A stretch of DNA of 64,000 nt, from assembly GCA_002269645.1 (NCBI GenBank), contig NIVC01002229.1, forward strand, positions 1 through 64,000, in the 5' to 3' direction. The notes below the pieces were generated by a model. That model ran no database searches. It had not been told where the DNA came from and saw only the letters and a program-made list of their open reading frames with translations. Positions 6,589 to 59,425 of the stretch are shown piece by piece; the first letter of the stretch is position 1; each line of letters begins with the position of its first letter. The stretch comes from Macrostomum lignano (lineage: Eukaryota). A program made the translations under genes and the position numbers.

Positions 6589-8737
6589 CTCAATCAGCAG
6601 GTTACAATAACTTTATTAATCTTGTGCAAGAGAAGCAGAATTTTGTGTCACTTATTAAAACTTGCCGACAGTTACATTACATCATGTACTAAGCGCTTAC
6701 TATGAGTAGTTGTCAGTTGCGAGCTTTACCTGTTAAATAAATTTCCTACAAGTTTTATTTTCAATTCTGTAAATTCCTATTCGGCATTAGCTATTCGTGT
6801 TTAGTCATCTTGCTGGCCCTCATCTCGCCTGTTACATTTTACTATTTAGTAGCCATCATTTTGAGTTCGATCCCATTGGATCTGCTATGCACATTCACTC
6901 GCCTGCATGTGCTTCCCGAGCTGCGCGTGCAATCCAAAGCCCCAGACGCAATTTCGCACATTTTAGCAAAGCGAATAAACTTTTTCTCATTATTTGAAGG
7001 GCCTCTTTCTGATTCACCCAAACTGGGAACTCGTCTTTGTTCTGCGCATTAAAATTCGGTCTTTGTTATTTGTTATGCATTATCGGGGCTACGCTATGAT
7101 GCAGCTGTTCCAGCATTCTGTTCGAGCGGGACAAGAAATACTCAACTAAGAAACAGAGAGCGGCTCCTTCATCACAGAGATGACCAGTACAAACCGCTGC
7201 GCCGTCAAGGCGAGCGGGCACAACACAAGCACATTAGTGGCGTATAACAATAGTAACAGTTATTATATTATTAATTAATAGTAATTATAAGCTTAGACGC
7301 AAATGCAGCTAGCATAACAAAAGTGCAGAGAAGGAACAGTGAGATGGCAGTCTGAAAATATAAAGCAATTATACAGGATCGGAGAAGCTTTGCACTATTG
7401 AATATTGATTAAATAAGCACCTCACCTCGGTCAGTAGTAACTGTAGGTAAGTCCCGCTAGCGCAGAGTTCGATAGGCAAAAAGAATGACAAAATCGCTAT
7501 CCAATAACGCAATAGATCTACTCTTAGTAGCGCACAGGTAAACTATTAGAATAATTTAATAAGTAGATAATTTTACAAAGCAAAACAGAAGCAGAGCTAT
7601 CCGAGGACTCAAAGCGCAACAATTAAGGAAAGTTAAATAAAAAATTAAACACTATATTATTAATTATTATTAAGACTAAGTATTAACTCCATACTTGACG
7701 CAAATATGGCAATGCAGGATTACTGATAGCTGCAGGACACGACTGTTGATTCACTCGCAGACAATTAACATTAATAACAAAAATCATAAATAGTAGGCAT
7801 CCGAGCATGCACACCAGACAGGCTCTGCACTCGCGGCTACGTATAAACAGGATTTGATAAAAAGAAGGAAAAACAACAGACAGGATCGCAGGAAAAGAAA
7901 CACAAAAACGCAAACCAAGCAATAAATCAGACTAACAGGCAGACAGCTGAGCTCGCGGCCACAGTGTGAGCAAAACCTCCTGACGGTGGAATCAACGCGC
8001 AGCATTTAAAAGAGAACAATGAACCCGGAGCAGCAATGACTGCAGTTATTATAGCAACAGGCAAGGGCAGTACAAAACAGACGCAAAGGAAACTAACACA
8101 GAACTCAATTATTAGGTTAAACGAGCTGCAAATTTGCAAAAACTGGGCGCGCACAATTAATGATGATTATGTAGACTCTGTCGCCAAGGCCAGTTGCATA
8201 CAGATATAAGAACTTCAACTGATGCTCAGCAGGCAGGCAGGCCTTTCGCTACCTGCTGTCGGCTCGGTCTTGGCCATAGACAGTGGAAAGCCAGATTTTG
8301 CCTTTAAGGAGAGGCCCATCGAGTGTTTTGGTATCTGTGGCCAAACCAAAGCAGAGAGAAACAAAACACAATAATCAATAGATAATACATGAATATGACG
8401 CTGGAGTATTAGTGAGGGAAAAGGACAGCTAAAGCCTAGTAGTGCAAGAGGGGAAGGGGCAGACGCGTAAAACAAGACGGGTGAATCGCTTTCTAGGAAA
8501 CGGCAAAATCAGTCAGGCAAAAAAAATCGACACAAAAAAACGGCAAAGAAAAAAGCGGCGAACCGGCTTGCGAAGCTGCGGCGGGCCGGCCTCCTCATTA
8601 CCTGAAATTTGAGGGGTCGAGTTGAACTTGGATCGTACTGAGCTACTCAGAGTTGTAGAAGGTGCTGACATTTTAACTTTAATTTAATTTTTAATTTAAA
8701 GATGTACGAATGTTGTCACAATTAATTATTATGAAAT

Positions 8738-9292
8738 TGAGGCCGAAGAAGCTGGAGTCTGATGTAAATTGAGGCCGATGAAGCTGGAGTCTGATGTAAA
8801 TTGAGGCCGATGAAGCTGGAGTCTGATGTAAATTGAGGCCGATGAAGCTGGAGTCTGATGTAAATTGAGGCCGATGAAGCTGGAGTCTGATGTAAATTGA
8901 GGCCGATGAAGCTGGAGTCTGATGTAAATTGAGGCCGATGAAGCTGGAGTCTGATGTAAATTGAGGCCGATGAAGCTGGAGTCTGATGTAAATTGAGGCC
9001 GATGAAGCTGGAGTCTGATGTAAATTGAGGCCGATGAAGCTGGAGTCTGATGTAAATTGAGGCCGATGAAGCTGGAGTCTGATGTAAATTGAGGCCGATG
9101 AAGCTGGAGTCTGATGTAAATTGAGGCCGATGAAGCTGGAGTCTGATGTAAATTGAGGCCGATGAAGCTGGAGTCTGATGTAAATTGAGGCCGATGAAGC
9201 TGGAGTCTGATGTAAATTGAGGCCGATGAAGCTGGAGTCTGATGTAAATTGAGGCCGATGAAGCTGGAGTCTGATGTAAATTGAGGCCGATA
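8738..9292. repeat. 32-bp homogeneous minisatellite, about 17 copies
   Basis: Unit AAATTGAGGCCGATGAAGCTGGAGTCTGATGT, essentially identical copies, downstream of the FUBP stop. Confidence 0.95.
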
Positions 9293-9457: not shown

Positions 9458-10677
9458 TCACCGCCCACTGGGCGTAGCGTCCCACCAGTTCGCCTGCTGC
9501 CCGTCCTGGGAGCCGCCCCAGCCGCTGCTCGTTTGGCCGCCGCCGCCTTCACCTCCGCCACCGCCGCCGCTGTTCCACTGGCCGACGCTGCCGCCGCCCC
9601 AGCCGTTTGAGGAGCCGCCCCAGCCCTGGCCGCCACCAGCGGACTGCTCCCAGCCGCCGCCACCGCCGCCGCTGCTCCCGCCAGCGCCTCCGCCACCGCT
9701 GCCGCTTTGACTTGAAGAGCCCCAGGCCCAGGCCGCGTTCTGCTGCTGCGATTGTTGCTGCTGCTGTGGCTGCTGAGACTGGCCGTTCTGCCACGACTGC
9801 CACTGTTGCCATTGGTTGTCATTAGCAACGGCTCCGCCGGCTGGCTGCTGCTGTGGCTGCTGCTGAGACTGGCGCAGGATGGCATCGGCGTATTCGTTCA
9901 TGCCCTGGCGGCGGTAGTACTCGGCCCAGGCCAAGCTGTAGTCCAGCTGCCCTGTCTGGCTGTTGAACTGCGGCGCCGGCATCGTCGGATCAGCGGCGGC
10001 TGCGGCAGCGGCTGCGGCAGCCGCGGACGACGAAGACGAGGAGCCGCCGCCAGCTGTGATGGAGAAGTGCTGATCGTGCGGCAGGCCGGCCTTCTCGCAG
10101 ATGAGACGCACAGCTTCGCTGATCTGGCTGGCTGAGCCCTGGATGTCGAAGACCTTCAGGCCAGTCTCGCTGGCGCCGTGCTGGTCGCGCTGGATGGACA
10201 CGTAGGCGCCGGACACTCTGTTGATCTCCTTGACGGTGTCGCCGCCCTTGCCGATGACCAGGCCGGCCTTCTCCGCTGGCACAGCGTACGTCGCCGTCTT
10301 CTTCTCCATGCCGCGCGGCCTGTCGGTCACGGGGATCTCGCCGGTCATCACGGCGTTGATGAGGTGCTGCACCCGGCCGAAGGCCTGCTCCACCGCCTGC
10401 TCGCTGCCGCCCACCTGCAGCAGCCGCTCGGGCAGGTCGTGGTCCTGCGGGCCCTCCTGGCGGAACTGCACCCGGGCGCCCGTCTCTTGGCTGATCTTGC
10501 GCAGCATTTCGCCGCCCTTGCCGATCACCACGCCGACGCAGCGGCGGGGCACAGAGATCTCGCGGAACGAATCGCCATAGTTTCCGCTCCGATGGCCGGG
10601 CGGAAACTCCTTGGCGTCCTTTGAGTTGAGCAGCTCCAGCACCAGCTCCTTGGCGTACTGCAGCCGGTCAGATGGGC
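9458..10677 (-). CDS. FUBP: FUBP/KHSRP/Psi-family KH protein, terminal exon (KH3, KH4, Tyr-rich motif, Q/G/W-rich tail)
   Basis: VGVVIGKGGE and AGLVIGKGGD GxxG loops; DYSLAWAEYYRRQG motif typical of FUBP C-termini. Acceptor CAACAG, phase-compatible with donor at 11153. Confidence 0.88.
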
Positions 10678-10877
10678 CTGTTGGGTGACAGGTCAGGGCC
10701 GCGATGTTTTTGAAGAGATAAAGTTGGAGTTTCCTTCTTGACAGTGCACGTTGTACTATAAGTGCTCCCGAAACCACATCAGTAAATATTATTAATCTAT
10801 GTAATTTCGTACTCATTTCGTATTGGCTAAAGCTTCACTCTTCTTAGTAAAAGCTGATGAGACATTCCAACGATTGA

Positions 10878-11118
10878 TCAGGGCAGGCCGGATTCCCCAC
10901 AGCACCCGAGGTGCCAAACTGCTCAGGGCAGGCCGGATTCCCCACAGCACCCGAGGTGCCAAACTGCTCAGGGCAGGCCGGATTCCCCACAGCACCCGAG
11001 GTGCCAAACTGCTCAGGGCAGGCCGGATTCCCCACAGCACCCGAGGTGCCAAACTGCTCAGGGCAGGCCGGATTCCCCACAGCACCCGAGGTGCCAAACT
11101 GCTCAGGGCAGGCCGGAT
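10878..11118. repeat. 45-bp intronic minisatellite, about 5.4 copies
   Basis: Unit CAGGGCAGGCCGGATTCCCCACAGCACCCGAGGTGCCAAACTGCT. Confidence 0.95.
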
Positions 11119-11153
11119 TTAACTGGAAAAATGAAAAGCCGCTCATGCCTCAC

Positions 11154-18409: not shown

Positions 18410-19192
18410 CTTTAGAAAATAAATATTTAAGTGTAGGTTTAGCTTAATTATGGCCTGATATAATAAATAGGCCTAGACAAGACTCTAGTCTAGAGACTAG
18501 ACAGTTATAGCAAGCCCACTGAACCCAACAAAGGAATCTTTCATACAGATAGTGTCGTAGGCGTGACTCTCCCTTCTTAATAATATCTCACTGCTGACAC
18601 CAAGTTGTCGTAGGGGTGGGCGCTCTCACTGAAATAATCCCACCGATTTGCTACCAAGTTGTCGTAGGTCTCTTTCTTCTGTCCTCCAACTATCCCACTA
18701 TTGCCACCAGCTGTGACAGGTGTTATTCCTCTGTCTTTCTAAACTTTTATAACTATTAGTGTTTATTAAATGTCCTACAAGCTGCCACCAAAGTTGTACA
18801 GGTGTTGTCTGCTTAACTAAAGTTATCCTGATTGTATTTCTGTTTTCACTCCCTAACTGTTTCTTAGAATCTCATATATTTTCTGGGTATCTATGTATTA
18901 GTCTGGTAGCGTTTTATGTATTAGTCTGGTAGCGTTCTATGTATTAGTCTGGTAGCGTTCTTAGTATATGGCCTGAGCGGTCTTACTGGTATATGTACTT
19001 TCTCTCTCCAGTCTGGGCGTTACCGAGATTAGAGGGTCACAGCGATTACTCTTAGTACTCTCTTTGCATGAATTCCCAATTCTGACTTTCAATACTTTTT
19101 AAAATGAGCAAAGATCTGAGAATGTTTATCGAACACGTTTTGAGCTTATAGCTATCGAACGAGTTATTCTTTTCTTGCCTACACTTCTCTTC

Positions 19193-19200
19193 CTTTTATA
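19193..19200 (-). promoter_or_regulatory. LTR TATA box (equivalent copy in the other LTR)
   Basis: TATAAAAG on the minus strand about 130 nt from the U3 start; AATAAA at 18767-18762. Confidence 0.5.
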
Positions 19201-19711
19201 CTAGTTGATCGCGTGTATTTTAAACAAATTGTTACAAGTTGAAAATATTTTGAGTATTAAAACAACAAATATAAATTTCGCGCTAATTTGAAAAACGAGT
19301 TTATAAGAAACAAAAGGTACCGCTATTACAACCTTCCTCCTCTTAAACTAAATTTCAAACAAATAAAATGCAGTGAGAAATTTATAAAACTGTCATAGCC
19401 ACAATAGTACATTTAGTGTAAGCAAATGCAGATAGATCATATGAAAACAAAGCACACTAGAAAATGGTTCAGTGCAAACAAGATATAGTATTATAAAGGC
19501 AGAAGTAAAAATGCGAGCACATATTAAAGTCAATTGGTATACTAGCATTAGGCAAAATTGTAAAAGTTATCAACATCAACATATTTAGGCTAAGAGTGCA
19601 AAAAGGTGCTAAAGAACAATAAAGCATGGTGCATAAAACATGGTGCAAGAAATAAGGCTTGATATAGTAAAAGTGGCAACCTATGATCAGTTTAAAGTCA
19701 ATAGTTCATAC

Positions 19712-20587
19712 TTAGAATTCACAGTACTGAGGTAGCTCCCTGTAGAACGGCCAACCGATCTGCGCGAAGCACCAGCGCAACTCGATGTTCAGCAACTGGC
19801 GCTGAGCTGGTCGGGCGTCGCTCCGAAGGGTCTGCTGTAGCCGTTCAGCGACCTCCTGGAGCAGCGCCACTGCCTCCAGGTGGGTGAACTGTTCGCGCAG
19901 GACTCGCAAATGCGGCCAGACCTGGGATCTCTGCGGAAGAGCTTCGTCGAGTCTTAGAAAGGCGATTCTCATCAAGTACTGATGGATGCCGTGGCGCGGG
20001 CGTTCCACCTCGGCGCCTCTGGCCTCTATCAGTTGGCGGACTACAGCTCGGTGGTCTTGAGGCGGGCCTTGCTGTGGTGGACGCGCAGGAGCATTCGGGC
20101 GGGATGGCCGAGATCTTCTCCCAGAAGGCGGCGCCTCCGCAGGAATCGCCATCTGAGCAGAGCGGCCGCAAGCGCCTCCAGCTCGAATCACGCACGACTT
20201 GACCGGGGTGGCCGCCTGGCGTTCTAGTAGGGCGGCCCTCTTCCTTTCTGGCCCATTGTCCTGACTGGCGGCGGGAGCTGGAGAGCTCGGTCTCTGCCGC
20301 TTGGAAGCTGAGTCTCCACCAGGGGGCCTCGGTCGAGTCGGCTGTCTCAACGGAGCCTCGATCTCCTGGCGCTCTCGCGGATCTCGCTCTTGCTGTTCGC
20401 GATGTTCTCGCTCTCGCCTTTCGCGTTCTTCTCGCTCTCGCCTCTCGCGTTCTTCTCGCTCTCGCCTCTCGCGTTCTTCTTGCTCTTCTTGCTGTTGTTG
20501 CTCCGGTTGCTGCTCGTCACTCTCTAGCAGAGCTTGAAGAAATGAATCGATATCGTCGTTGTTGTCCATTACGATTTCTTCGCACAA
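19712..20587 (-). CDS. Orphan accessory ORF of the LTR element (291 aa; E/R-rich helix, basic NLS-like motifs)
   Basis: Intact GC-rich ORF in the env position; ERRERE repeats, KRQR and RKR motifs; TATAAAT about 85 nt upstream. Confidence 0.65.
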   Translation of the reverse strand: MCEEIVMDNNDDIDSFLQALLESDEQQPEQQQQEEQEERERREREERERREREERERREREHREQQERDPRERQEIEAPLRQPTRPRPPGGDSASKRQRPSSPAPAASQDNGPERKRAALLERQAATPVKSCVIRAGGACGRSAQMAIPAEAPPSGRRSRPSRPNAPARPPQQGPPQDHRAVVRQLIEARGAEVERPRHGIHQYLMRIAFLRLDEALPQRSQVWPHLRVLREQFTHLEAVALLQEVAERLQQTLRSDARPAQRQLLNIELRWCFAQIGWPFYRELPQYCEF

Positions 20588-20990
20588 TTCTCTGTATAGG
20601 TCTTTGCAGAGGTCTCGGAACCGTTCTTCGGATGTGTGAACTATGGGAGCCTGCTAGCGGTCAGGGAGTTTGTATTTATAGGCTGGCGGCCGAAAAGCTG
20701 GACCGCATCATTGTGTTCCACGCGGGCCTCGAGTGGGGGGTGCTCGGGTTGGCAGATTTGACACTTCGATTTTTATAGATTTTCTTTAGATTTTTATAAC
20801 TTTTTTATTTTTCGAGATTTTTTTCTTGAGTAATATGTCATATGAAAGCTTACATTTGGCAGAATAATATAGTGTTTTCAGATTTGTTCTATGTACAACA
20901 TGTCAATTTCTATAGGCAAATAACTATTATTAATATGAAATTTTAACTAATTTACACTGGTTTCAATGGCAATTCGCTGACGTCATCACC

Positions 20991-21990
20991 CTATTGTTCC
21001 AAATATCGCGCGTAGCGCCTTCGGGGCACGAATCCGTTCACACCTTCTCCTTGCTGAGTCACTCTATCGCCTCGTGGTCTCAAATTATACCTTTCTACTG
21101 GCTGAGCTTCCTCCTCTAACTCTATTGCTCCTTCCTCTTCTGATGGCTCATCTGAGTCAGTCGCTCTCTCTGTATTCTCACTGTTCAATTCTTCATTTCC
21201 TTCGTTTTCACTCTGCGAATTCGGATCTGCGAATACTCTCCATTGAATTCTGTTTTCTTCGTCTGAGCTTTTCTCCTCTAAAATTTGAACTTCTGGAATT
21301 CTAACTTCTTTTTGTCTATGGCAAATTCTTTTCTTCGGCTTCGGCTGTTCTTTCTTCTTAGTTGGCACTGTTGCTGGTTTTAAATTATTATTAATTTCCT
21401 CTGGTAAATCAATTTCGGATTTCGGCACTGGAGTCAGATTATTACTGTTTTTCTTCGAACAATTTTGCAAATTCTCACAGCTTCTCTTCGAAATCTCATC
21501 TTCATTTCATCTCATCTCAACTCAACAACTTCTCGACTCAATATCTCAACTCGACCCTGACCTCTCGAAAGCTTCTCTGCTGAACTCATGCCAGCTACAG
21601 CTCTACTGTCACGGGTCCTACAACTCTCAACTCTCAATTCTCCTTTCACTGTTTCAGCTTGGCCTCGTCAGTAGAATCATAGAGATTCTGTATTAATCTG
21701 CACTTTAGGCCTTACTGCCCTTCCTTTCCTGCATGGCCTGACTCTCTGAACCTTTTTTGGCTCTTCTGAAAGCGTCATCGGCCTCTTCTTTCTGCCTTTG
21801 GTCAATCTGCAATAGGTCAGTATACAACTGTCCGTGCATCATGCCAATCTCTGCAATCCAATCTCTTCGACAATTTTCTTCGCACAATTTGCACAATCTT
21901 CTCAGTATCATCTTCTCGTCAACTTCTCTGAGTAAAATAATCTTCCTTCAATGTTTTCAGTCCGAAATTGCAGTTCCCTGGCTTTCCTAA
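20991..21990 (-). pseudogene. Probable relic of the pol/integrase C-terminal region
   Basis: RYNLRPR motif near the end of ORF 21470-20991, typical of gypsy pol tails; ILRRLCKLCEENCRRDW resembles a post-catalytic integrase helix. No DDE or RT motifs. Confidence 0.35.
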
Positions 21991-22279
21991 ATAAGTTTCT
22001 TAGTAAAACGGCCCTTCCAGGGTCAAACGGCCCTTTTAAGGTCATCTAGTTAAAACGGTCCTTTTGAGGGTTACCTCCTAAATTTTTAGCTATTTAATGA
22101 CTTTTATTTACTTTAGACGGCTTACTTGGTGAGTACATTGCAATGTGCAGATGAAATACTTCTTAAACAAATATTTTTGGGATTTTTCTAACTTTTATTC
22201 GTTTTTATATTTTTGCATATATATTTGAAACATATTTACAAAAAGCTTTTCAGAATCGCGCTCCTATGTACGAGTCTTC

Positions 22280-22855
22280 TTAAGGTGGCTTCTGCTGAGC
22301 ATGCCGGTTGAACCTGATTCGGCACTGGTGTCCTGCCTGTGGCCTCATAGGTCCTGGTTGATCACAGAAGAAACAGTGACCCGGTTTTGGCTCCGGTCTG
22401 GTTCCACTGAATCGGTGCCTCTTCCAATTCGGCATTGGTCGGGGTGTCTGCGGTACTGTCTTAGTCTCTAGGCTGATGTTGGTGAAAATTACAGTTAGAG
22501 TGACTAGGCACTCCATCAGCGCTTCCATGCCCTTCTTCTGTCTCTGTTCCTCACTCTCTCCGTACTCTTCAATAATCCTTTGGCGGATGTACTGATACTT
22601 GAAGTCTTCTTTCCTATTGCTCAGTCTGCGCTTGACTCTCTCTGGGATGTTTAGATTCGCGAATAACTCTTTCTTGCACTCTTCCTCACTGAGCTTCTTA
22701 TTCCTACAGTGCTGCTCAAAGGTGATCAACCACTTGCGAATATCTTCGCCAGGGGTGTACTTCTCGAATCTTTCTTCTATTGTCACTTTCCCTAGACAGT
22801 CTCGCAGTTGTTCTGCCAGCATAGCAATGGCGTCATTAGCCTGATTCTGATTCAT
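22280..22855 (-). CDS. Gag-like ORF (191 aa) with a degenerate zinc knuckle
   Basis: First ORF after the PBS; FEKYTPGEDIRKWLITFEQHC resembles a retrotransposon gag N-terminus; CFFCDQPG knuckle remnant. Confidence 0.7.
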   Translation of the reverse strand: MNQNQANDAIAMLAEQLRDCLGKVTIEERFEKYTPGEDIRKWLITFEQHCRNKKLSEEECKKELFANLNIPERVKRRLSNRKEDFKYQYIRQRIIEEYGESEEQRQKKGMEALMECLVTLTVIFTNISLETKTVPQTPRPMPNWKRHRFSGTRPEPKPGHCFFCDQPGPMRPQAGHQCRIRFNRHAQQKPP

Positions 22856-24820
22856 CTTCTCTTGAAAAACTTTTCAAATTATTCTTCGGAATTCTTCTAA
22901 ATCTAGTTTTAAGAGCTCGCGCCGTTTCTCTAATCCTTATCGCTGCCACCAAGTTGTCGTAGGCGTGACTCTCCCTTCTTAATAATATCTCACTGCTGAC
23001 ACCAAGTTGTCGTAGGGGTGGGCGCTCTCACTGAAATAATCCCACCGATTTGCTACCAAGTTGTCGTAGGTCTCTTTCTTCTGTCCTCCAACTATCCCAC
23101 TATTGCCACCAGCTGTGACAGGTGTTATTCCTCTGTCTTTCTAAACTTTTATAACTATTAGTGTTTATTAAATGTCCTACAAGCTGCCACCAAAGTTGTA
23201 CAGGTGTTGTCTGCTTAACTAAAGTTATCCTGATTGTATTTCTGTTTTCACTCCCTAACTGTTTCTTAGAATCTCATATATTTTCTGGGTATCTATGTAT
23301 TAGTCTGGTAGCGTTTTATGTATTAGTCTGGTAGCGTTCTATGTATTAGTCTGGTAGCGTTCTTAGTATATGGCCTGAGCGGTCTTACTGGTATATGTAC
23401 TTTCTCTCTCCAGTCTGGGCGTTACCGAGATTAGAGGGTCACAGCGATTACTCTTAGTACTCTCTTTGCATGAATTCCCAATTCTGACTTTCAATACTTT
23501 TTAAAATGAGCAAAGATCTGAGAATGTTTATCGAACACGTTTTGAGCTTATAGCTATCGAACGAGTTATTCTTTTCTTGCCTACACTTCTCTTCCTTTTA
23601 TACTAGTTGATCGCGTGTATTTTAAACAAATTGTTACAAGTTGAAAATATTTTGAGTATTAAAACAACAAATATAAATTTCGCGCTAATTTGAAAAACGA
23701 GTTTATAAGAAACAAAAGGTACCGCTATTACAATAGTTAGCCAATTATAATAGGCCTAATCCTAATTCTACTTTGTTTGATTATATCTCTTCAAAGCTTC
23801 TTATTAGGCTGAAGTTAGGGTATAAGGCCTGATCTGTGACTAAATGACTTTTTATTTTTACATAGTCATGGCATCCTTGATGTCTTGCATTCATGATTCA
23901 TGAATTCATGATTCATGCATTGTATATTGTATACATTATTCAATGTATTGTAAGTTATACAATGTACACATGTATAAACATTTCGAATTTCGAATTTCGA
24001 ATTCGCACCTAACTGCAGCGTGAGTAAATAGTATAAAATTTGCAATCCCAACTTGGAAACATGGTCAAAGCAATTAGAAAATCATTATATATATTAATAG
24101 TATTAGAATTAGAAAAATGCCAGCACATATTTAATAGCCAAGTTTCCTTAATTTAAAAAAGTAATACTACATCGTAAAAAACGAATACTTTTTTTCTAAA
24201 GTTAACGCTAGCATCTCAAATTCTAATACTGCAAGCTGGGGCAAAGCAATGCTTTAACAATATTTTATTTTTTAAGTCTACCCTCAAGCTTCAAGGCTTT
24301 TTTACATTTGGCATTGACAATTGCCTTTCGTACTCTTAAAAAGTGCTAAGGAGTGGATTTGACATTGCATTTGCTAATATGTACTACTTCGATATGTTGC
24401 ATGTGTAGCCTGCCGGATTGGAGGCACATGTAAATGCATCAATTCTAAATATTTTGTCCTGAATAGGTCTTCAGCTAGCTGTTGCCATTCTGTTGTCCAG
24501 CAGCCTGAAGATTTTGCAGTATAGGAATCGTCATGCGGGATGACGACAGGACGACACCTCCTGGGAGACTGCGGCTGAAGCCAAAGGAAAAGAGAGGATG
24601 CGACCTTCAGATGACCTTCAGTATTGCAGCAAGGACCACTGTATTTCAGGTCCTTGTATTGCAGACCGCATACATGCTGTATGATCTGCTAGCTGGTTAC
24701 TGCACTGCACTGATATTACTTGCTATGTATATTAGATCTTCCATACCCACTGTACTACTCGGGGCTTGCTTAACCCCGCCTTTGCCTCCTGAAAACAATC
24801 TGTAACTAAATATCTGTGTG

Positions 24821-25805: not shown

Positions 25806-26178
25806 AGTTTTTTGCCAGCTATCCCGTGGTGCAAGTGAGGGGAGCAAACAAACTGGGAGCGCAGCCGAGTTTTTTGCCAGCTATCCCGTGGTGCAAGTGA
25901 GGGGAGCAAACAAACTGGGAGCGCAGCCGAGTTTTTTGCCAGCTATCCCGTGGTGCAAGTGAGGGGAGCAAACAAACTGGGAGCGCAGCCGAGTTTTTTG
26001 CCAGCTATCCCGTGGTGCAAGTGAGGGGAGCAAACAAACTGGGAGCGCAGCCGAGTTTTTTGCCAGCTATCCCGTGGTGCAAGTGAGGGGAGCAAACAAA
26101 CTGGGAGCGCAGCCGAGTTTTTTGCCAGCTATCCCGTGGTGCAAGTGAGGGGAGCAAACAAACTGGGAGCGCAGCCGA
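25806..26178. repeat. 62-bp minisatellite, about 6 copies
   Basis: Unit GAGTTTTTTGCCAGCTATCCCGTGGTGCAAGTGAGGGGAGCAAACAAACTGGGAGCGCAGCC. Confidence 0.95.
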
Positions 26179-28428: not shown

Positions 28429-29226
<798 letters not shown>

Positions 29227-30267: not shown

Positions 30268-31204
30268 GTAGCTTCACAGGCAGTGGAGTAGCTTGATAGC
30301 CAGTGGAGTAGCTTAATAGGCAGTGAGTGGAGTAGCTTCACAGGCAGTGGAGTAGCTTCACAGGCAGTGGAGTAGCTTAATAGGCAGTGGAGTAGCTTCA
30401 CAGGCAGTGGAGTAGCTTAATAGGCAGTGGAGTAGCTTAATAGGCAGTGGAGTAGCTTCACAGGCAGTGGAGTAGCTTAATAGGCAGTGGAGTAGCTTAA
30501 TAGGCAGTGGAGTAGCTTCACAGGCAGTGGAGTAGCTTAATAGGCAGTGAGTGGAGTAGCTTCACAGGCAGTGGAGTAGCTTCACAGGCAGTGGAGTAGC
30601 TTCATAGGCAGTGGAGTAGCTTCACAGGCAGTGGAGTAGCTTAATAGGCAGTGGAGTAGCTTAATAGGCAGTGGAGTAGCTTCACAGGCAGTGGAGTAGC
30701 TTAATAGGCAGTGGAGTAGCTTCACAGGCAGTGGAGTAGCTTAATAGGCAGTGGAGTAGCTTCACAGGCAGTGGAGTAGCTTCACAGGCAGTGGAGTAGC
30801 TTCACAGGCAGTGGAGTAGCTTCACAGGCAGTGGAGTAGCTTCACAGGCAGTGGAGTAGCTTCACAGGCAGTGGAGTAGCTTCACAGGCAGTGGAGTAGC
30901 TTCACAGGCAGTGGAGTAGCTTCACAGGCAGTGGAGTAGCTTCACAGCCAGTGGAGTAGCTTCACAGGCAGTGGAGTAGCTTCACAGGCAGTGGAGTAGC
31001 TTCACAGGCAGTGGAGTAGCTTCACAGGCAGTGGAGTAGCTTCACAGGCAGTGGAGTAGCTTCACAGCCAGTGGAGTAGCTTCACAGCCAGTGGAGTAGC
31101 TTCACAGGCAGTGGAGTAGCTTCACAGGCAGTGGAGTAGCTTCACAGGCAGTGGAGTAGCTTCACAGGCAGTGGAGTAGCTTCACAGGCAGTGGAGTAGC
31201 TTCA
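30268..31204. repeat. 20-bp minisatellite, about 45 copies, two main variants
   Basis: GCAGTGGAGTAGCTTCACAG and GCAGTGGAGTAGCTTAATAG. Confidence 0.95.
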
Positions 31205-47138: not shown

Positions 47139-47336
47139 TTTTTAAGATTCAAGCATGCTAAATATACATGCCAATGAACTATACTGGGTGTCCTGATAGA
47201 TAGTTCACACCTTCATAGTTCACATCTTGCATTGTTGCAAGCTTCTTATTGTTTATCTCCACACATTTGTAATTGTGGATTTGCAAGTTGCTCCAGCACC
47301 GATCCATGCCGTATTCCTGAGCGTCCTCGCCGAGCC

Positions 47337-48662
47337 ATGGACAGCGACGATGACGACTTCAGCGACATGGACGAGCTGGACTTCGACTCGTCCCCGGAGG
47401 ACACCAACGTGGAGCTGGAGAACCAGTACTACAACTCCAAGACTCTGAAGGACGAGAATCCTGAGCTGGCGCTCAAGGAGTACCAGAAGGTGCTCGACCT
47501 GGAGGGCGCAGAGAAGGGCGACTGGGGCTTCAAGGCGCTCAAGCAGATGATGAAGATCAACTTCCGGCTCGGCCGGTTCGACGAGATGATGAGGCTGTAC
47601 AAGGAGCTGCTGACGTACATCAAAAAGGCTGTGACCCGCAACTACTCTGAGAAGTCCATTAACTCCATCCTGGACTATGTGAGCACCTCCAAGCAGAACG
47701 ACCTGCTGCTCAACTTCTACCACACCACGCTGAACGCGCTCAAGGAGGCGAAGAACGACCGGCTGTGGTTCAAGGCCAACCTCAAGCTCGGCAAGCTGTA
47801 CCTGGACAATGCGGAGTGGCCGCTGCTGCAGCGGATCATTAAGGAGCTGCGCGCCTCATGCGAAACCGAGGACGGCGAGCTGGACAGCAAGAAGGGCACC
47901 AACCTGCTGGAGATCTTCGCCCTGGAGATCCAGATGTACACCTTGCAGAAGAACAACAAGAAGCTGAAGGACCTGTACAACCAGTCGCTGAACATCAAGT
48001 CGGCCATCCCGCACCCGCTCATCATGGGCATCATTCGCGAGTGCGGCGGCAAGATGCAACTGCGCGAGGCCGAGTTCGAGCAGGCGCACACCGACTTCTT
48101 CGAGGCGTTCAAAAACTACGACGAGTCCGGCAGCCCGCGCCGCATCCAGTGCCTGAAGTACCTGGTGCTCGCCAGCATGCTGCGCCAGGTGGGCATCAAC
48201 CCGCTGGACAGTCAGGAGGCCAAGCCCTACCGCAACGACCCCGAGGTCACCGCCATGACCAGCCTGGTGGCCGCCTACCATGCCAACGACATCCACAGCT
48301 TTGAGCAGCTGCTCCGGCAGCACCGGGCGGCCATCATGGAGGACCCCTTCATCCGGGAGCACATCGAGGAGCTGCTGCGCAACGTCCGCACGCAGGTGCT
48401 GTGCCGCCTCATTCAGCCCTACACTCGCATCCGCATCCCCTTCATCTCGGCGCAGCTCAACATCGACCAGGCCGAGGTCGAGGCCCTCATCGTGTCCTGC
48501 ATCCTGGACAACCTCATCGTTGGCAAGATCGACCAGCAGGCTCAGGTGCTGGTGATCGAGCGGGCCGCTGTGCAGCAGCAATACCAGACCATGGACAAGC
48601 TGGCCAACCAGGTCACCGGCCTCCACAAGGCCGTCATTGCCCGCCTGCCGCTCAAGCACTGA
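47337..48662 (+). CDS. COPS2: COP9 signalosome subunit 2 (441 aa, intronless CDS)
   Basis: [96 protein letters not shown]. Confidence 0.97.
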
Positions 48663-49178: not shown

Positions 49179-49297
49179 TTGGCACATACGCTCGTAATCG
49201 TTGGAGCTTAATTAAGATTAGAGATTAGTCTGTCTATTCTCACTGCTTGACCAGCTGCCCGCTACTCGCATCCAATGTTGCAGAGCTCTGCGCAGAG

Positions 49298-50878
49298 ATG
49301 GCGGGCCAGCCGGAGCCACAGCAGAGCAGCGGCACCAGCTGCCCGATGTGCAAGAAGGCATTCTCTGATGGGCCAGCGGCCCACTACCTGCAGCACGTGC
49401 TGACCCACTCAGATGGCGCACAGAGGCGGCACCGGTGCGGTCAGTGCGGGAAGCGGTTCAACTGCCAGAGCAAACTGAAGAGGCACCTTGTGATGCACAC
49501 GGGCGAGCGGCCGTTCCAGTGCGAAGAGTGCGGGAAGCGGTTTGACCGCCAGAGCAATCTGAAAAGGCACCTTGTGGTGCATACGGGCGAGCGGCTGCTC
49601 CAGTGCGAAGAGTGCGGGAAGCGGTTCAACTGCCAGAGCACTCTGAAGAGGCACCTTGTAGGGCACACGGGCGAGCGACCGTTTCAGTGCGAAGAGTGCG
49701 GGAAGCGGTTTGACCGCCAGAGCAATCTGAAAAGGCACCTTGTGGTGCATACGGGCGAGCGGCTGCTCCAGTGCGAAGAGTGCGGGAAGCGGTTCAACTG
49801 CCAGAGCACTCTGAAGAGGCACCTTGTAGGGCACACGGGCGAGCGACCGTTTCAGTGCGAAGAGTGCGGGAAGCGGTTTGACCGCCAGAGCAATCTGAAA
49901 AGGCACCTTGTAGTGCACACGGGCGAGCGGGGCGAGCGGCCGTTCCAGTGCGGTCAGTGCGGGAAGCGGTTCAACTGCCAGAGCAAACTGAAGAGGCACC
50001 TTGTGGTGCACACGGGCGAGCAGCCGTTCCAGTGCGAAGAGTGCGGGAAGCGGTTCAACTGCCAGAGCAAACTGAAGAGGCACCTTGTGGTGCACACGGG
50101 CGAGCAGCCGTTCCAGTGCGAAGAGTGCGGGAAGCGGTTCAACTGCCAGAGCAAACTGAAGAGGCACCTTGTGGTGCACACGGGCGAGCAGCCGTTCCAG
50201 TGCGAAGAGTGCGGGAAGCGGTTCAACTGCCAGAGCAAACTGAAGAGGCACCTTGTGGTGCACACGGGCGAGCAGCCGTTCCAGTGCGAAGAGTGCGGGA
50301 AGCGGTTCAACTGCCAGAGCAAACTGAAGAGGCACCTTGTGGTGCACACGGGCGAGCAGCCGTTCCAGTGCGAAGAGTGCGGGAAGCGGTTCAACTGCCA
50401 GAGCAAACTGAAGAGGCACCTTGTGGTGCACACGGGTGAGCGGCCGTTCGAGTGCGGTCAGTGCCAGCGGCGTTTCACTCAATCGAGCGCCCTGGCGGAG
50501 CACCTGCGGCAACTGCACTCGCCTGGACGGCTTTGTCAGCTTGGCCAGAGCCGCTCGGCTTTTAAGGACTCTGCCAACCTGATCAACGGACAGAAGCAGT
50601 CTGCCTGCAGCCAGTACGATGACAGCTCCCAGCTGCACACGGGTGAGTGCAGCAGAGCATTCACAGCCGGCCAGTCAAATCACAAGCTGGCGCACACAGA
50701 TAGACGGCCTTACAAATGCAGCCACTGCCAGAGAGGCTTCAAGCGGTTGTCTCACCTGAATGATCACGTGCGGCGGCACACCGGAGAAAAACCATTTGTC
50801 TGCCGCATCTGCGCTGTGCGATTCTACAGCTGCAGCTCCTTGTGGACTCACTTCCGGTACTGGCACAAGCCGCGCTGA
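49298..50878 (+). CDS. Tandem C2H2 zinc-finger protein (526 aa, about 16 fingers, 12 homogenised)
   Basis: CxxC...H...H fingers with TGE(R/Q)PF linkers; 84-bp DNA repeats; no recognisable effector domain. Confidence 0.92.
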   Translation: MAGQPEPQQSSGTSCPMCKKAFSDGPAAHYLQHVLTHSDGAQRRHRCGQCGKRFNCQSKLKRHLVMHTGERPFQCEECGKRFDRQSNLKRHLVVHTGERLLQCEECGKRFNCQSTLKRHLVGHTGERPFQCEECGKRFDRQSNLKRHLVVHTGERLLQCEECGKRFNCQSTLKRHLVGHTGERPFQCEECGKRFDRQSNLKRHLVVHTGERGERPFQCGQCGKRFNCQSKLKRHLVVHTGEQPFQCEECGKRFNCQSKLKRHLVVHTGEQPFQCEECGKRFNCQSKLKRHLVVHTGEQPFQCEECGKRFNCQSKLKRHLVVHTGEQPFQCEECGKRFNCQSKLKRHLVVHTGEQPFQCEECGKRFNCQSKLKRHLVVHTGERPFECGQCQRRFTQSSALAEHLRQLHSPGRLCQLGQSRSAFKDSANLINGQKQSACSQYDDSSQLHTGECSRAFTAGQSNHKLAHTDRRPYKCSHCQRGFKRLSHLNDHVRRHTGEKPFVCRICAVRFYSCSSLWTHFRYWHKPR

Positions 50879-54581: not shown

Positions 54582-55403
54582 TGTAACAGTGGTTATTCCT
54601 CTGTCTTTATGAACAATCCCAGCGTTACTACCAAAGTTGTAACAGGGGTAACTTCTATCCCTACAAATGATTCCACAGCTATTACTAAAGTTGTCACAGG
54701 GCTTAATTTTCTGTCTTTATAAATGTTGGTAGCTGCCACCAAGACAATATTCTATTAATAAATTATGAGTTTATTAATCTTAGAATAAGTCTAAGAAATG
54801 GTTCTTGGAATTAGTCTGAGTATATATCTAAGTACTTATCTGAGTATTTATCTGAGCATAAGTCTTAGTACTTGGTCTGTGAATTATTCTTAGAATACTA
54901 TTTAGCCTTTACAAGTATCGTTCTCCTGTTATTCCAGTAGCATTTACTGTTATTCTGGCCTGAGCGGTATATTGGCTTACTGGTATATGTATTGCATGTA
55001 CTTCCAATCCTGGGCATTACTGAGATCAGAGGGTGACAGCCTCCGGTTATTCTTTCATGTATCAATTTAGGATCTACTTCGTAGTCTCTTACTACTTCTA
55101 CTTCTCAGTAGTATATACTGTATGTGTTCTCTGCCACTTCACTTCTCTTCCTGCAAATGAATAACTCGGAAAACAATCTTCAATAATGTTTACTTGGAAC
55201 TCTTACTATTCCCTATTAACTGTCTTGTTATCGAACCGCGATGCACAAGGTTGGTCTCTCCTCTGCCAAAAATGCTTCTATTTATACTAAAATTTACTGC
55301 TAGTTTAATCAAAAATTAGTTTGCGTAAAATATTATGAAAAATATGTGTATTATAACAAATGTTTTTTCCTAGATTCGGCATGCATTCAAAATGAGTTAT
55401 ACA
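54582..55403 (-). mobile_element. Solo LTR of a family related to the 18553 element (right boundary uncertain)
   Basis: Shared blocks TGT.ACAG..GTTATTCCTCTGTCTTT, TGGCCTGAGCGGT..CTTACTGGTATATGTA, CTGGGC.TTAC.GAGAT.AGAGGGT.ACAGC, and the same PBS/terminus units. Confidence 0.7.
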
Positions 55404-57404: not shown

Positions 57405-59135
57405 AGTGTCACTCAGTGTGTCACACAAGTTATTAAGCTCCAATCTCTTAGTATCACTCCGTGTGTCATACCAGTTATTAAGCTCTTATCTCTTAGTGTC
57501 ACTCCGTGTGTCATACCAGTTATTAAGCTCTTATCTCTTAGTGTCACTCCGTGTGTCACACAAGTTATTAAGCTCTTATCTCTTAGTGTCACTCAGTGTG
57601 TCACACAAGTTATTAAGCTCCAATCTCTTAGTATCACTCCGTGTGTCATACCAGTTATTAAGCTCTTATCTCTTAGTGTCACTCCGTGTGTCATACCAGT
57701 TATTAAGCTCTTATCTCTTAGTGTCACTCCGTGTGTCATACCAGTTATTAAGCTCTTATCTCTTAGTGTCACTCCGTGTGTCATACCAGTTATTAAGCTC
57801 TTATCTCTTAGTGTCACTCCGTGTGTCATACCAGTTATTAAGCTCTTATCTCTTAGTATCACTCCGTGTGTCATACCAGTTATTAAGCTCTTATCTCTTA
57901 GTATCACTCCGTGTGTCATACCAGTTATTAAGCTCTTATCTCTTAGTATCACTCCGTGTGTCATACCAGTTATTAAGCTCTTATCTCTTAGTGTCACTCC
58001 GTGTGTCATACCAGATATTAAGCTCCCATATTCAGGCGTCATTCCGTGTGTCACTAGTTATTAATCACCCATATCCAAGTGTCACTCCGTGTGTCACTAG
58101 TTATTAAGCTCCCATCTAATGTGTCACTCCGTGTGTCACACCAGTTATTAAGCTCCGATCTCCAGGTGACACTCCGTGTGTCACACCAGTTATTAAGCTC
58201 CGATCTCAAGATGACACTCCGTGTGTCACACCAGTTATTAAGCTCCGATCTCCAGGTGACACTCCGTGTGTCACACCAGTTATTAAGCTCCGATCTCCAG
58301 GTGACACTCCGTGTGTCACACCAGTTATTTAGCTCCCATCTCCATGTGACACTCCGTGTGTCACACCAGTTATTAAGCTCCGATCTCCAGGTGACACTCC
58401 GTGTGTCACACCAGTTATTAAGCTCCAATCTCCAGGTGACACTCCGTGTGTCACACCAGTTATTAAGCTCCAATCTCCAGGTGACACTCCGTGTGTCACA
58501 CCAGTTATTAAGCTCCAATCTCCAGGTGACACTCCGTGTGTCACACCAGCTATTAAGCTCCGATCTCCAAGTGTCACTCCGTGTGTCACACCAGTTATTA
58601 AGCTCCAATCTCCAGGTGACACTCCGTGTGTCACACCAGTTATTAAGCTCCGATCTCCAGGTGACACTCCGTGTGTCACACCAGTTATTAAGCTCCGATC
58701 TCCAGGTGACACTCCGTGTGTCACACCAGTTATTTAGCTCCCATCTCCATGTGACACTCCGTGTGTCACACCAGTTATTAAGCTCCAATCTCCAGGTGAC
58801 ACTCCGTGTGTCACACCAGTTATTAAGCTCCAATCTCCAGGTGACACTCCGTGTGTCACACCAGTTATTAAGCTCCAATCTCCAGGTGACACTCCGTGTG
58901 TCACACCAGTTATTAAGCTCCAATCTCCAGGTGACACTCCGTGTGTCACACCAGTTATTAAGCTCCAATCTCCAGGTGACACTCCGTGTGTCACACCAGT
59001 TATTAAGCTCCAATCTCCAGGTGACACTCCGTGTGTCACACCAGCTATTAAGCTCCGATCTCCAAGTGTCACTCTGTGTGTCACACCAGTTATTAAGCCC
59101 CGATCTCCATGTTTCACTCCGTGTGTCACACCAGT
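57405..59135. repeat. 45-bp intronic minisatellite, about 38 copies, two sequential variants
   Basis: CACTCCGTGTGTCA(T/C)ACCAGTTATTAAGCTC core; left variant ends TTATCTCTTAGTGT, right variant CAATCTCCAGGTGA. Confidence 0.95.
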
Positions 59136-59170
59136 CACGCCAGCCCACCTGCATTTGCCTTGCCCGCCAG

Positions 59171-59425
59171 GTGACCGGCAAGCTGGGCATGGGCAAGTTC
59201 TGCCAGTCCGACAAGTTCCGCAGCCTGAACGTCGGCTGCGCCATGGACGAAGGCCTGGCCAACCCCACCGAGGCTTTCACAGTTTACTATGGCGAGCGCT
59301 CCGTCTGGTGGCTTCGCTTTGAGATCCGCGGCCAGCCCGGACACGGCTCCCGGCTGATGGAGGACACGGCAGGGGAGAAGGCGGCCAAGCTGATCCAGCG
59401 GCTCTACCGCTTCAGGGACAGTCAG
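59171..59425 (+). CDS. ACY1: ACY1 exon
   Basis: VTGKLGM...LNVGCAMDEGLANP...YGERSVWW...GQPGHGS; AG/GT boundaries in phase 0. Confidence 0.92.

What the first reader, a model, noticed from the sequence alone, without database searches (positions are those of the whole stretch)
18553..18810. LTR end is a tandem record of reverse-transcription primer tRNAs (captured plus-strand strong-stop ends)
The true junction is GCTGCCACCA-AGT|TGTCGTAGG (about 22941-22963), and the working PBS pairs only 11 nt with tRNA-Leu. Inside each LTR this junction recurs four times (TGT at 18606, 18660, 18712, 18795; spacing 53, 54, 52, 83). The internal copies carry about 18 nt of tRNA 3' end. ATCTCACTGCTGACACCA (18585-18602) is 16/18 to the Leu-CAG/CAA-type end ATCCCACT(C/T)CTGACACCA. 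ATCCCACCGATTTGCTACCA (18637-18656) and ATCCCACTATTGCCACCA (18692-18709, 15/18) match the Leu-AAG/TAG-type end ATCCCACCGCTGCCACCA. tRNA ends are recalled from conserved vertebrate sequences. Eighteen nt is the length RT copies before stopping at m1A58, so these look like mis-transferred (+) strong-stop termini that recorded different isoacceptors. Conservation of the PBS and att parts while the spacers diverge suggests a function, such as extra priming sites or decoys for 18-nt 3' tRFs that silence LTR elements.
Basis: partly seen in the sequence, partly recalled or inferred. Interest (0 to 1): 0.85.

Follow-up and report, generated by a model that had tools for sequence, protein, structure and literature searches.

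The report
Tandem primer-binding-site modules inside LTR
The end of this flatworm retrotransposon's long terminal repeat carries four extra, diverged copies of its own "LTR tip plus tRNA-primer site" junction, and a distant relative has the same layout, so the element probably keeps several alternative start sites for reverse transcription rather than a log of captured tRNAs.

Summary
The window is Macrostomum lignano contig NIVC01002229.1. At 18553-23733 (minus strand) lies a 5.2-kb non-autonomous Ty3/gypsy-type LTR element. It has two identical 779-bp LTRs, a 4-bp target-site duplication (ATAG), a polypurine tract, a gag remnant and no pol. The last ~250 nt of each LTR hold four modules (A-D). 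Each is an LTR-tip-like motif ending in ACA, a 2-4-nt linker, an 18-20-nt tRNA-Leu-type PBS-like stretch and a spacer. A fifth module (E) is the working LTR/PBS junction.

A related autonomous element in an independent assembly (gag ~38% identical) carries four such modules just upstream of gag. This array is the only nucleotide similarity between the two elements. LTR-tip and PBS parts are conserved, while spacers are at shuffled-sequence level.

The "captured strong-stop ends recording different isoacceptors" reading is not supported:
- All modules, the working PBS included, lie 3-4 edits from one Leu 3' end.
- The isoacceptor call rests on one base.
- Several modules carry indels that no tRNA copy could have.

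Best reading: an old, constrained multi-module U5/PBS cassette. The LTR boundary falls at whichever module primes, here the last. Use of the internal modules as alternative initiation sites is inferred, not shown. It appears to be a new variant of a known kind.

The parts
18553..23733 (-). Whole non-autonomous Ty3/gypsy-type LTR retrotransposon (5181 bp), flanked by the 4-bp target-site duplication ATAG (18549-18552 and 23734-23737).
   Evidence: Identical LTRs and flanks. No pol in any frame. The gag relatives are retrotransposon gags and the relative L066 has PR-RT-RNaseH.
22955..23733 (-). 5' LTR (779 bp). Element sense runs TGTAATAG...CCTACGACA.
   Evidence: 100% identical to 18553-19331.
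18553..19331 (-). 3' LTR (779 bp).
19332..19344 (-). Polypurine tract AAGAGGAGGAAGG, directly upstream of the 3' LTR.
   Evidence: Read from the sequence (output).
22933..22954 (-). Module E, the working site. It comprises the linker ACT (22952-22954) and the PBS TGGTGGCAGCG (22941-22951), which is an 11-nt perfect match to the tRNA-Leu ...CGCTGCCACCA end. A decayed remainder ATAAGGAT follows (22933-22940).
   Evidence: LTR identity stops exactly at 22955. Match lengths.
22955..22963 (-). U5 tip (att) CCTACGACA of module E. The same sequence at 18553-18561 is the tip of the 3' LTR.
   Evidence: It mirrors the U3 tip TGTAATAG (TGTnnTAG).
22987..23016 (-). Module D in the 5' LTR: PBS-like TGGTGTCAGCAGTGAGAT (22987-23004), linker ACT (23005-23007), tip copy CCTACGACA (23008-23016). 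The 3'-LTR copy is 18585-18614.
23039..23070 (-). Module C in the 5' LTR: PBS-like TGGTAGCAAATCGGTGGGAT (20 nt, 23039-23058), linker ACT (23059-23061), tip copy CCTACGACA (23062-23070). The 3'-LTR copy is 18637-18668.
23094..23124 (-). Module B in the 5' LTR: PBS-like TGGTGGCAATAGTGGGAT (23094-23111), linker GC (23112-23113), older-type tip copy CACCTGTCACA (23114-23124). The 3'-LTR copy is 18692-18722.
23174..23206 (-). Module A in the 5' LTR: PBS-like TGGTGGCAGCTTGTAGGAC (23174-23192), linker ACTT (23193-23196), older-type tip copy CACCTGTACA (23197-23206). The 3'-LTR copy is 18772-18804.
18553..18804 (-). The whole module array as it sits in the 3' LTR. This is the finding's interval.
23164..23169 (-). 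AATAAA, a candidate poly(A) signal (3'-LTR copy 18762-18767). It lies between modules A and B, which would put A in R and B-D in U5.
   Evidence: Motif position only. Its use as a poly(A) signal is inferred.
22280..22855 (-). gag-like ORF (191 aa), truncated relative to its 313-aa M. lignano homologue P0001.

Best explanation
The LTR end is an old, vertically inherited tandem array of modules. Each module is a U5 tip (integrase-recognised att), a linker, a tRNA-Leu-type PBS and a spacer.

In an LTR element, U5 ends wherever the tRNA primer sits. In this copy minus-strand synthesis started at the last module (E). Everything upstream, including the four older modules, was therefore copied into both LTRs.

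The genomic RNA starts in R of the 5' LTR and ends in R of the 3' LTR. It would thus carry the whole array at its 5' end whichever module is used, so the array is inherited intact. Only the DNA-level LTR boundary would move.

The internal modules keep exactly the two things an initiation site needs. These are a tip ending in CA at the right distance from TGG, and 15-16 of 18 potential base pairs to tRNA-Leu. Everything between them has randomised. I therefore infer that they are kept by selection as alternative, back-up initiation sites and LTR termini.

Shown:
- the anatomy of the array;
- that E is the site used in this copy;
- the conservation pattern;
- the presence of the array in a distant relative.

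Inferred:
- that internal modules are actually used for priming;
- the origin of the array by template-switch duplication of the junction.
For: - LTR identity ends exactly at the ACA of module E, with target-site duplication and polypurine tract in place.
- The 16-nt CCTACGACAACTTGGT is identical in C, D and E (0 of 100 shuffles).
- The relative L066 (Logan contig SRR28338157; gag plus PR-RT-RNaseH; gag ~38% identical) has four modules of the same design at 738-938, just upstream of leader and gag. L067 has at least one, and L068 has two PBS-like sites.
- blastn finds no nucleotide similarity between L066 and the window element outside the array.
- Segment identities: tip plus linker 88% within the window and 77% within L066 (shuffled 48 +/- 8). 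PBS-like parts 68-75%, with best matches across elements (D~a 89%, E~d 90%; shuffled 49 +/- 7). Spacers 40-50% (shuffled 42 +/- 7).
- Tips cluster by element, as expected if each must fit that element's integrase. PBS parts do not.
- The U5 tip motif mirrors the U3 tip (TGTnnTAG), so it is the integrase site.
- A (10 nt) and B (8 nt) keep contiguous matches to the tRNA-Leu end, and D keeps 9 nt to the CAG/CAA type. These lengths are in the range known to work for Ty3 and Ty1 (my own knowledge).
- Engineered retroviral vectors with two PBS initiate at both (Voronin and Pathak 2004; known to me from the title in the reference list seen and from memory).
Against: - Only one genomic copy with both LTRs was available, so no copy was seen whose LTR ends at an internal module.
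- Module C has only a 4-nt contiguous run and L066 a lacks a well-placed CA, so not every module can be functional.
- Orthology of internal modules across elements (D~a) rests on two shared G-to-A changes and is not statistically secure.
- The M. lignano tRNA-Leu set was not obtainable. Planarian and human ends served as proxies.
- The organism behind L066-L068 is unknown.
Confidence: 0.5

Rival explanations
1. The array is conserved for a function other than priming. The PBS-like repeats in the 5' RNA would bind extra tRNA-Leu molecules or 18-22-nt 3' tRNA fragments, as a decoy or sponge against PBS-directed silencing. Alternatively, the repeats are protein or RNA-structure sites for packaging or dimerisation.
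For: - The conservation pattern and cross-lineage presence are the same as for the best explanation.
- 3' tRNA fragments of 18 and 22 nt are known to act on PBS sequences of LTR elements in mouse cells (PMC7599909).
- All modules keep 15-16 of 18 potential pairs to tRNA-Leu.
Against: - A decoy needs no integrase tip, yet the tip plus linker is the best-conserved part and co-varies with each element's own terminal tip.
- No shared hairpin was found across modules.
- Nothing is known about such tRNA fragments in Macrostomum.
Confidence: 0.2
2. Neutral relic. The junction was duplicated a few times by reverse-transcriptase template switching or replication slippage, independently in each lineage. 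The copies are simply decaying, and the apparent conservation reflects short motifs and few sequences.
For: - Reverse transcriptase readily duplicates and deletes direct repeats (my own knowledge).
- Tip motifs cluster by element, as independent duplication predicts.
- Older modules A and B are more decayed and lie further from the tip.
- The D~a similarity could be chance.
Against: - Spacers within each element are already at shuffled-sequence identity, while tip plus linker is 77-88% and includes 16 of 16 identical bases in three window modules. Uniform neutral decay cannot give that contrast.
- Two lineages with ~38% gag identity both keep four to five modules.
Confidence: 0.15
3. Each module is a mis-transferred plus-strand strong-stop end, that is, a fresh copy of the U5 tip plus the 18 nt copied from whichever tRNA-Leu isoacceptor primed that cycle. 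The array would then be a record of primers.
For: - In antisense, each module reads exactly like a tRNA 3' end joined to the start of minus-strand DNA, CCA included.
- B, D, L066 a, b and c are exactly 18 nt and end at the position-59 equivalent.
- Tips cluster by element while PBS parts do not, which this model also predicts.
- D is one edit closer to the CAG/CAA-type end.
Against:
- A, C and E, and L066 d and L067, carry indels incompatible with a tRNA copy. The E-type indel is shared across lineages, so the tRNA sequence is evidently not re-inherited at the site known to be used.
- No planarian tRNA ends like any internal module.
- Recent capture would leave similar spacers, but they are random.
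- I could find no simple strand-transfer path for the first duplication.
Confidence: 0.1

Closest known systems
Canonical tRNA-primed Ty3/gypsy (Metaviridae) LTR retrotransposon, U5/PBS junction
   Same: - LTRs run TG...CA, with a 4-bp target-site duplication and a polypurine tract.
- The PBS lies 3 nt after the LTR and is complementary to the 3' end of a tRNA (Leu), with a short (11-nt) perfect match.
- Relatives encode gag and PR-RT-RNaseH.
   Different: - One junction is the rule. Here four extra junction modules lie inside U5/R of each LTR, and four lie upstream of gag in a relative.
- This copy lacks pol.
Engineered MLV and HIV-1 vectors with two primer-binding sites (Voronin and Pathak, J Virol 2004; title seen, content from memory)
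   Same: More than one PBS lies on one genomic RNA. Initiation at the downstream site carries the upstream PBS into the LTR.
   Different: - Those vectors are artificial, have two identical PBS and no duplicated att.
- Here the array is natural, has 4-5 diverged modules each with its own tip copy, and is conserved between lineages.
Tandem repeats in LTR U3 or 5' UTR regions (enhancer repeats)
   Same: Short tandem units inside an LTR. This element also has an ordinary one, a 23-nt repeat at 18892-18967.
   Different: Those repeats are homogeneous and regulatory. The units here are heterogeneous except for the att and PBS motifs, and they lie at the U5 tip.
PBS-directed control by 3' tRNA fragments (18 and 22 nt) in mouse ERVs (reviewed in PMC7599909)
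   Same: The target is the 18-nt PBS footprint.
   Different: No natural decoy array has been described, as far as I know and as far as the searches show. Nothing here tests binding of tRNA fragments.

Membership tests
LTR retrotransposon, Ty3/gypsy (Metaviridae) | Two direct LTRs with TG...CA ends, flanked by a short target-site duplication | tested here: met
   779-bp LTRs, 100% identical, TGT...ACA, target-site duplication ATAG.
LTR retrotransposon, Ty3/gypsy (Metaviridae) | PBS next to the 5' LTR and a polypurine tract next to the 3' LTR | tested here: met
   TGGTGGCAGCG lies 3 nt after the LTR. AAGAGGAGGAAGG abuts the 3' LTR.
LTR retrotransposon, Ty3/gypsy (Metaviridae) | gag plus pol in the order PR-RT-RNaseH-IN | tested here: not met
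   The window copy has only a truncated gag-like ORF and no pol, so it is a non-autonomous derivative. The relative L066 has PR, RT and gypsy-type RNaseH domains. Its integrase lies beyond the contig end.
Non-autonomous LTR element (LARD-like) | Intact LTRs, PBS and polypurine tract, no pol, and evidence of recent mobilisation in trans | tested here: met
   Identical LTRs imply a recent insertion and pol is absent. The autonomous partner was not identified.
tRNA-Leu-primed element | PBS complementary to the 3' end of a host tRNA-Leu | tested here: inconclusive
   There is an 11-nt perfect match to ...CGCTGCCA+CCA. That end is present in human and in the planarian tRNA set. M. lignano tRNA genes could not be fetched, and the window holds none.
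   A, C and E are 19-20 nt with internal indels.
   All lie 3-4 edits from one Leu end. Only D is one edit closer to another type. No planarian tRNA ends like an internal module.
Multi-PBS element with alternative initiation (proposed here) | Several modules, each with a CA-ending tip at PBS distance and a tRNA-complementary stretch, conserved between lineages | tested here: met
Multi-PBS element with alternative initiation (proposed here) | Family copies whose LTR boundary falls at different modules, or cDNA starts at internal modules | not testable with these tools
   No other genomic copy could be retrieved.

The most novel reading that the evidence does not exclude
The array is a working multi-PBS cassette. 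One RNA genome can start reverse transcription at any of several module sites, possibly with different tRNA-Leu isodecoders. This would yield proviruses whose LTRs differ in length in steps of one module (a 'breathing' LTR boundary) while the RNA stays unchanged. Such redundancy would protect the element against loss, occupation or tRNA-fragment blocking of any single PBS.
Probability: 0.3. Interest if true: 0.8.

Novelty: new variant of a known kind. Interest (0 to 1): 0.6.

Why it matters
LTR elements and retroviruses are taught as having one PBS that fixes the U5 boundary. A naturally conserved series of PBS-plus-att modules would show three things:
- The boundary can be modular.
- Engineered two-PBS vectors would have a natural counterpart.
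- There would be a tractable system for asking how primer choice, integrase end recognition and host PBS-directed defence shape each other. M. lignano is transgenic-ready and has heat-inducible LTR elements (PMC12801592).

There is also a practical side. LTR-annotation tools that expect a single PBS directly after the LTR may mis-call boundaries in such families.

Tried and rejected
Searches for more copies:
- No other copies or solo LTRs in the window. The only extra hit is an 85-nt, 75% match at 54956-55040.
- An exact two-module pattern found nothing in JGI metagenomes.
- Exact-protein look-ups of the window gag, of P0001 and of the GC-rich ORF were not on record, so no second M. lignano copy could be read.

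tRNA and RNA checks:
- ARAGORN found no tRNA gene in the window.
- Rfam found nothing relevant in the element.
- A panel of 248 tRNA 3' ends from viral contigs was biased by the search pattern. It showed only that Leu acceptor stems vary so much that 1-3 differences cannot assign an isoacceptor.
- Folding the modules gave no common hairpin, so I dropped the structured-RNA idea as a primary explanation.

Control set:
- 52 distant Ty3/gypsy loci came from metagenomes. 19 had LTR pairs, but none has a TGG-type PBS next to the LTR. They are probably primed differently and are useless as a control.

Literature:
- Word searches for multiple or tandem PBS returned only noise.
- Voronin and Pathak 2004 (PMC400373) is not held.
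- The M. lignano LTR paper does not mention PBS or tRNA.

Other:
- A PPT-like TGTTGT motif at L066 565-582 could mark an LTR start, but TATA boxes lie upstream, so the L066 LTR limits remain undetermined.
- Assembly artefact was rejected. Both LTR copies are identical and an independent assembly shows the same design.

Full report
**What and where**

The window is positions 1-64000 of Macrostomum lignano contig NIVC01002229.1 (assembly GCA_002269645.1). The window's COP9 subunit 2 gene was found on that record at the same coordinates.

The finding lies in an LTR retrotransposon on the minus strand, 18553-23733.
- The LTRs (18553-19331 and 22955-23733) are 779 bp, 100% identical and run TGT...ACA.
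- ATAG flanks both sides, and AAGAGGAGGAAGG abuts the 3' LTR.
- The 3.6-kb interior holds a 191-aa gag-like ORF and no pol in any frame. This is a recently inserted non-autonomous element.
- Its gag is 39% identical to a CCHC-type protein of M. lignano, P0001.
- A related Logan contig, L066, encodes gag followed by protease, reverse transcriptase and gypsy-type RNase H. The lineage is therefore Ty3/gypsy.

**Checking the observation**

In element sense the LTR ends as five modules.

| Module | Tip copy | Linker | PBS-like part |
|---|---|---|---|
| A | CACCTGTACA | ACTT | TGGTGGCAGCTTGTAGGAC |
| B | CACCTGTCACA | GC | TGGTGGCAATAGTGGGAT |
| C | CCTACGACA | ACT | TGGTAGCAAATCGGTGGGAT |
| D | CCTACGACA | ACT | TGGTGTCAGCAGTGAGAT |
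| E | CCTACGACA | ACT | TGGTGGCAGCGATAAGGAT |

- LTR identity stops exactly after the ACA of module E. E is therefore the site used when this copy was made.
- The 15-mer spanning the junction occurs 5 times in the window, against about 1 expected with up to 3 mismatches allowed. No shuffle of 100 reached 5.
- The B and D PBS-like parts match published tRNA-Leu 3' 18-mers within 2-3 mismatches, against 0.01 expected per window.
- Low-mismatch copies of the module core occur nowhere else in the window.

**Are the tRNA ends valid for a flatworm?**

- ATCCCACCGCTGCCACCA is a published human Leu 3' fragment.
- The planarian tRNA catalogue (PMC7962491, supplementary file 8) contains genes ending ...AATCCCACCGCTGCCA and ...AATCCCACTTCTGACA. 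The two vertebrate Leu ends therefore hold in a platyhelminth.
- M. lignano's own tRNA genes could not be reached, and the window holds none.

**Testing the capture reading**

One search compares every module with these ends.
- All lie 3-4 edits from the same ...CGCTGCCACCA end.
- The working PBS plus its flank (3 edits) is no less tRNA-like than B (3), D (3), C (4) or A (4).
- The difference is where the edits fall. E keeps 11 contiguous matches from the CCA end, A keeps 10, B 8, D 5 (9 to the CAG/CAA type) and C 4.
- The second isoacceptor rests on D alone and on essentially one G-to-T change.
- A, C and E are 19-20 nt long with internal indels, which a copy of a tRNA 3' end cannot have.
- None of the internal variants, from the window or from L066, is the end of any planarian tRNA.

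The 18-nt extent is simply the footprint that any tRNA-derived PBS has.

**Relatives change the picture**

A profile search with the window gag and P0001 returned three Logan contigs.
- L066 has four modules of the same design directly upstream of its leader and gag. They are CCCTACCACGT-ATT-TGGTGACAGCAGTGAGAA, CCCTGTAACA-AATT-TGGTGGCATCGATCGGAT, CCCTACAACA-AATT-TGGTGGCCGCGTTGAGAT and CCCTACAGCA-ATT-TGGTGGCAGCGGTAAAGGAT.
- L067 starts only 49 nt upstream of one such module. L068 has two PBS-like sites.
- With sensitive blastn, the array is the only nucleotide similarity between L066 and the window element.

Segment-wise identities:

| Segment | Within window C-E | Within L066 b-d | Between elements | Shuffled |
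|---|---|---|---|---|
| Tip plus linker | 88% | 77% | 66% | 48 +/- 8 |
| PBS-like part | 68% | 74% | 75% | 49 +/- 7 |
| Spacer | 50% | 40% | 43% | 42 +/- 7 |

- The best PBS-like matches run across elements: D~a 89% and E~d 90%.
- The last modules of three lineages also share the first leader bases (GAT(C)TAGA) and, in E and d, the same odd TAA(A) insertion. The working PBS is therefore inherited as such, not refreshed from the tRNA.
- This is not one fixed duplication in neutral decay. The tip and PBS parts are constrained while the spacers are free.

**How it most likely works**

U5 ends where the primer sits. With several modules on the RNA, priming at the last one copies all upstream modules into both LTRs, as seen here. 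Priming at an internal one would give a shorter LTR and leave the downstream modules in the leader.

An AATAAA lies between modules A and B. If it is the poly(A) signal, modules B-E occur only at the 5' end of the RNA. The RNA genome would then be the same whichever module was used, so the array would be stably inherited and each module could be kept by selection.

What is conserved is what an initiation site needs:
- the integrase tip, CTAnnACA, which mirrors the U3 tip TGTAATAG;
- a CA placed 2-4 nt from TGG;
- a tRNA-Leu-complementary stretch.

Tips co-vary with each element's own terminal tip, as expected if one integrase must recognise all of them. I therefore favour alternative initiation sites and termini (confidence about 0.5).

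The origin of the array is most simply template-switch duplication of the junction. The older A and B modules carry a different tip type (CACCTGT(C)ACA) that resembles the tip of L068 (AACACCTCAC). This hints at recombination between lineages.

**Rivals**

- A tRNA or tRNA-fragment decoy, or another RNA-level role, explains the PBS parts but not the tips. No shared hairpin was found.
- Neutral decay cannot give 16 of 16 identical bases next to randomised spacers.
However, it is contradicted by the indels, by the inherited imperfect working PBS and by the random spacers.

**Limits**

- Only one copy with both LTRs was available, so no LTR boundary polymorphism could be looked for.
- Host tRNAs are proxied by planarian and human sequences.
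- The source organisms of L066-L068 are unknown.
- The orthology of internal modules (D~a) is suggestive only.
- The control set of 52 distant gypsy loci turned out to lack tRNA-type PBS and was uninformative.
- I found no description of natural tandem PBS/att arrays. The closest parallel is the engineered two-PBS retroviral vectors (reference seen). The literature searches here were crude.

Noticed in passing
window 18892-18967 and 23294-23369: A 23-nt tandem repeat (TATGTATTAGTCTGGTAGCGTTT, 3.3 copies, 92% matches) in the presumed U3 of each LTR. It is probably an ordinary promoter or enhancer repeat.
   Followed up: no
window 19700-20600 (ORF 19712-20587, minus strand): A GC-rich island (63-67% GC) lies inside an element that is otherwise 30-45% GC. 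It encodes a 291-aa ORF with ERE/RER low-complexity repeats and no Pfam match. It may be a captured host fragment. An exact-protein look-up found nothing.
   Followed up: partly
window 22811-22855 (gag N-terminus) versus P0001: The first 15 residues, MNQNQANDAIAMLAE, are identical between the window gag and the M. lignano protein P0001, although the rest is about 37% identical. This suggests a conserved 5' cis region or recombination with the autonomous partner.
   Followed up: no
window 54956-55040: An 85-nt stretch is 75% identical to LTR positions 417-491. It may be an old fragment of a related LTR.
   Followed up: no
L066 565-582: AGTAAGAGAAAG|TGTTGTGACC looks like a polypurine tract followed by an LTR start (TGTTGT is the reverse complement of the tip ...ACAACA). 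If real, the L066 LTR would be only about 225-340 bp and mostly module array. TATA boxes lie upstream, so this is unresolved.
   Followed up: partly
L068 141-165 and 288-307: A third relative has a PBS-like GGTGGCAGCAA fused directly to a tip-like CCCTACCAAAC. An AATAAA follows at 222, and then a second PBS-like TGGTGGAGCAGCGTTGGAAT preceded by AACACCTCAC. That tip type matches window modules A and B.
   Followed up: partly
window 9458-10816(-), 47322-48662(+), 49247-50878(+), 58054-59280(-): Host genes appear as long single ORFs: a FUBP-like KH-domain protein, COP9 signalosome subunit 2, a 13-finger C2H2 zinc-finger protein, and an ORF with Slx4 and ET-module matches built on 45-nt repeats.
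   Followed up: partly
window 28429-29226, 8734-9291, 10878-11119, 25806-26178, 30268-31204: The satellite load is very high. It includes (CTAT)x200 and several perfect or near-perfect minisatellites (32-nt x17, 45-nt x5.4, 62-nt x6, 20-nt x46).
   Followed up: no
loci L072-L115 (metagenome contigs Ga0307512/14/15): A family of about 6.1-kb Ty3/gypsy elements with about 220-bp LTRs has no TGG-type PBS after the LTR (...CCTTACA|CTATT...). It may be self-primed or primed by an internal tRNA fragment.
   Followed up: no
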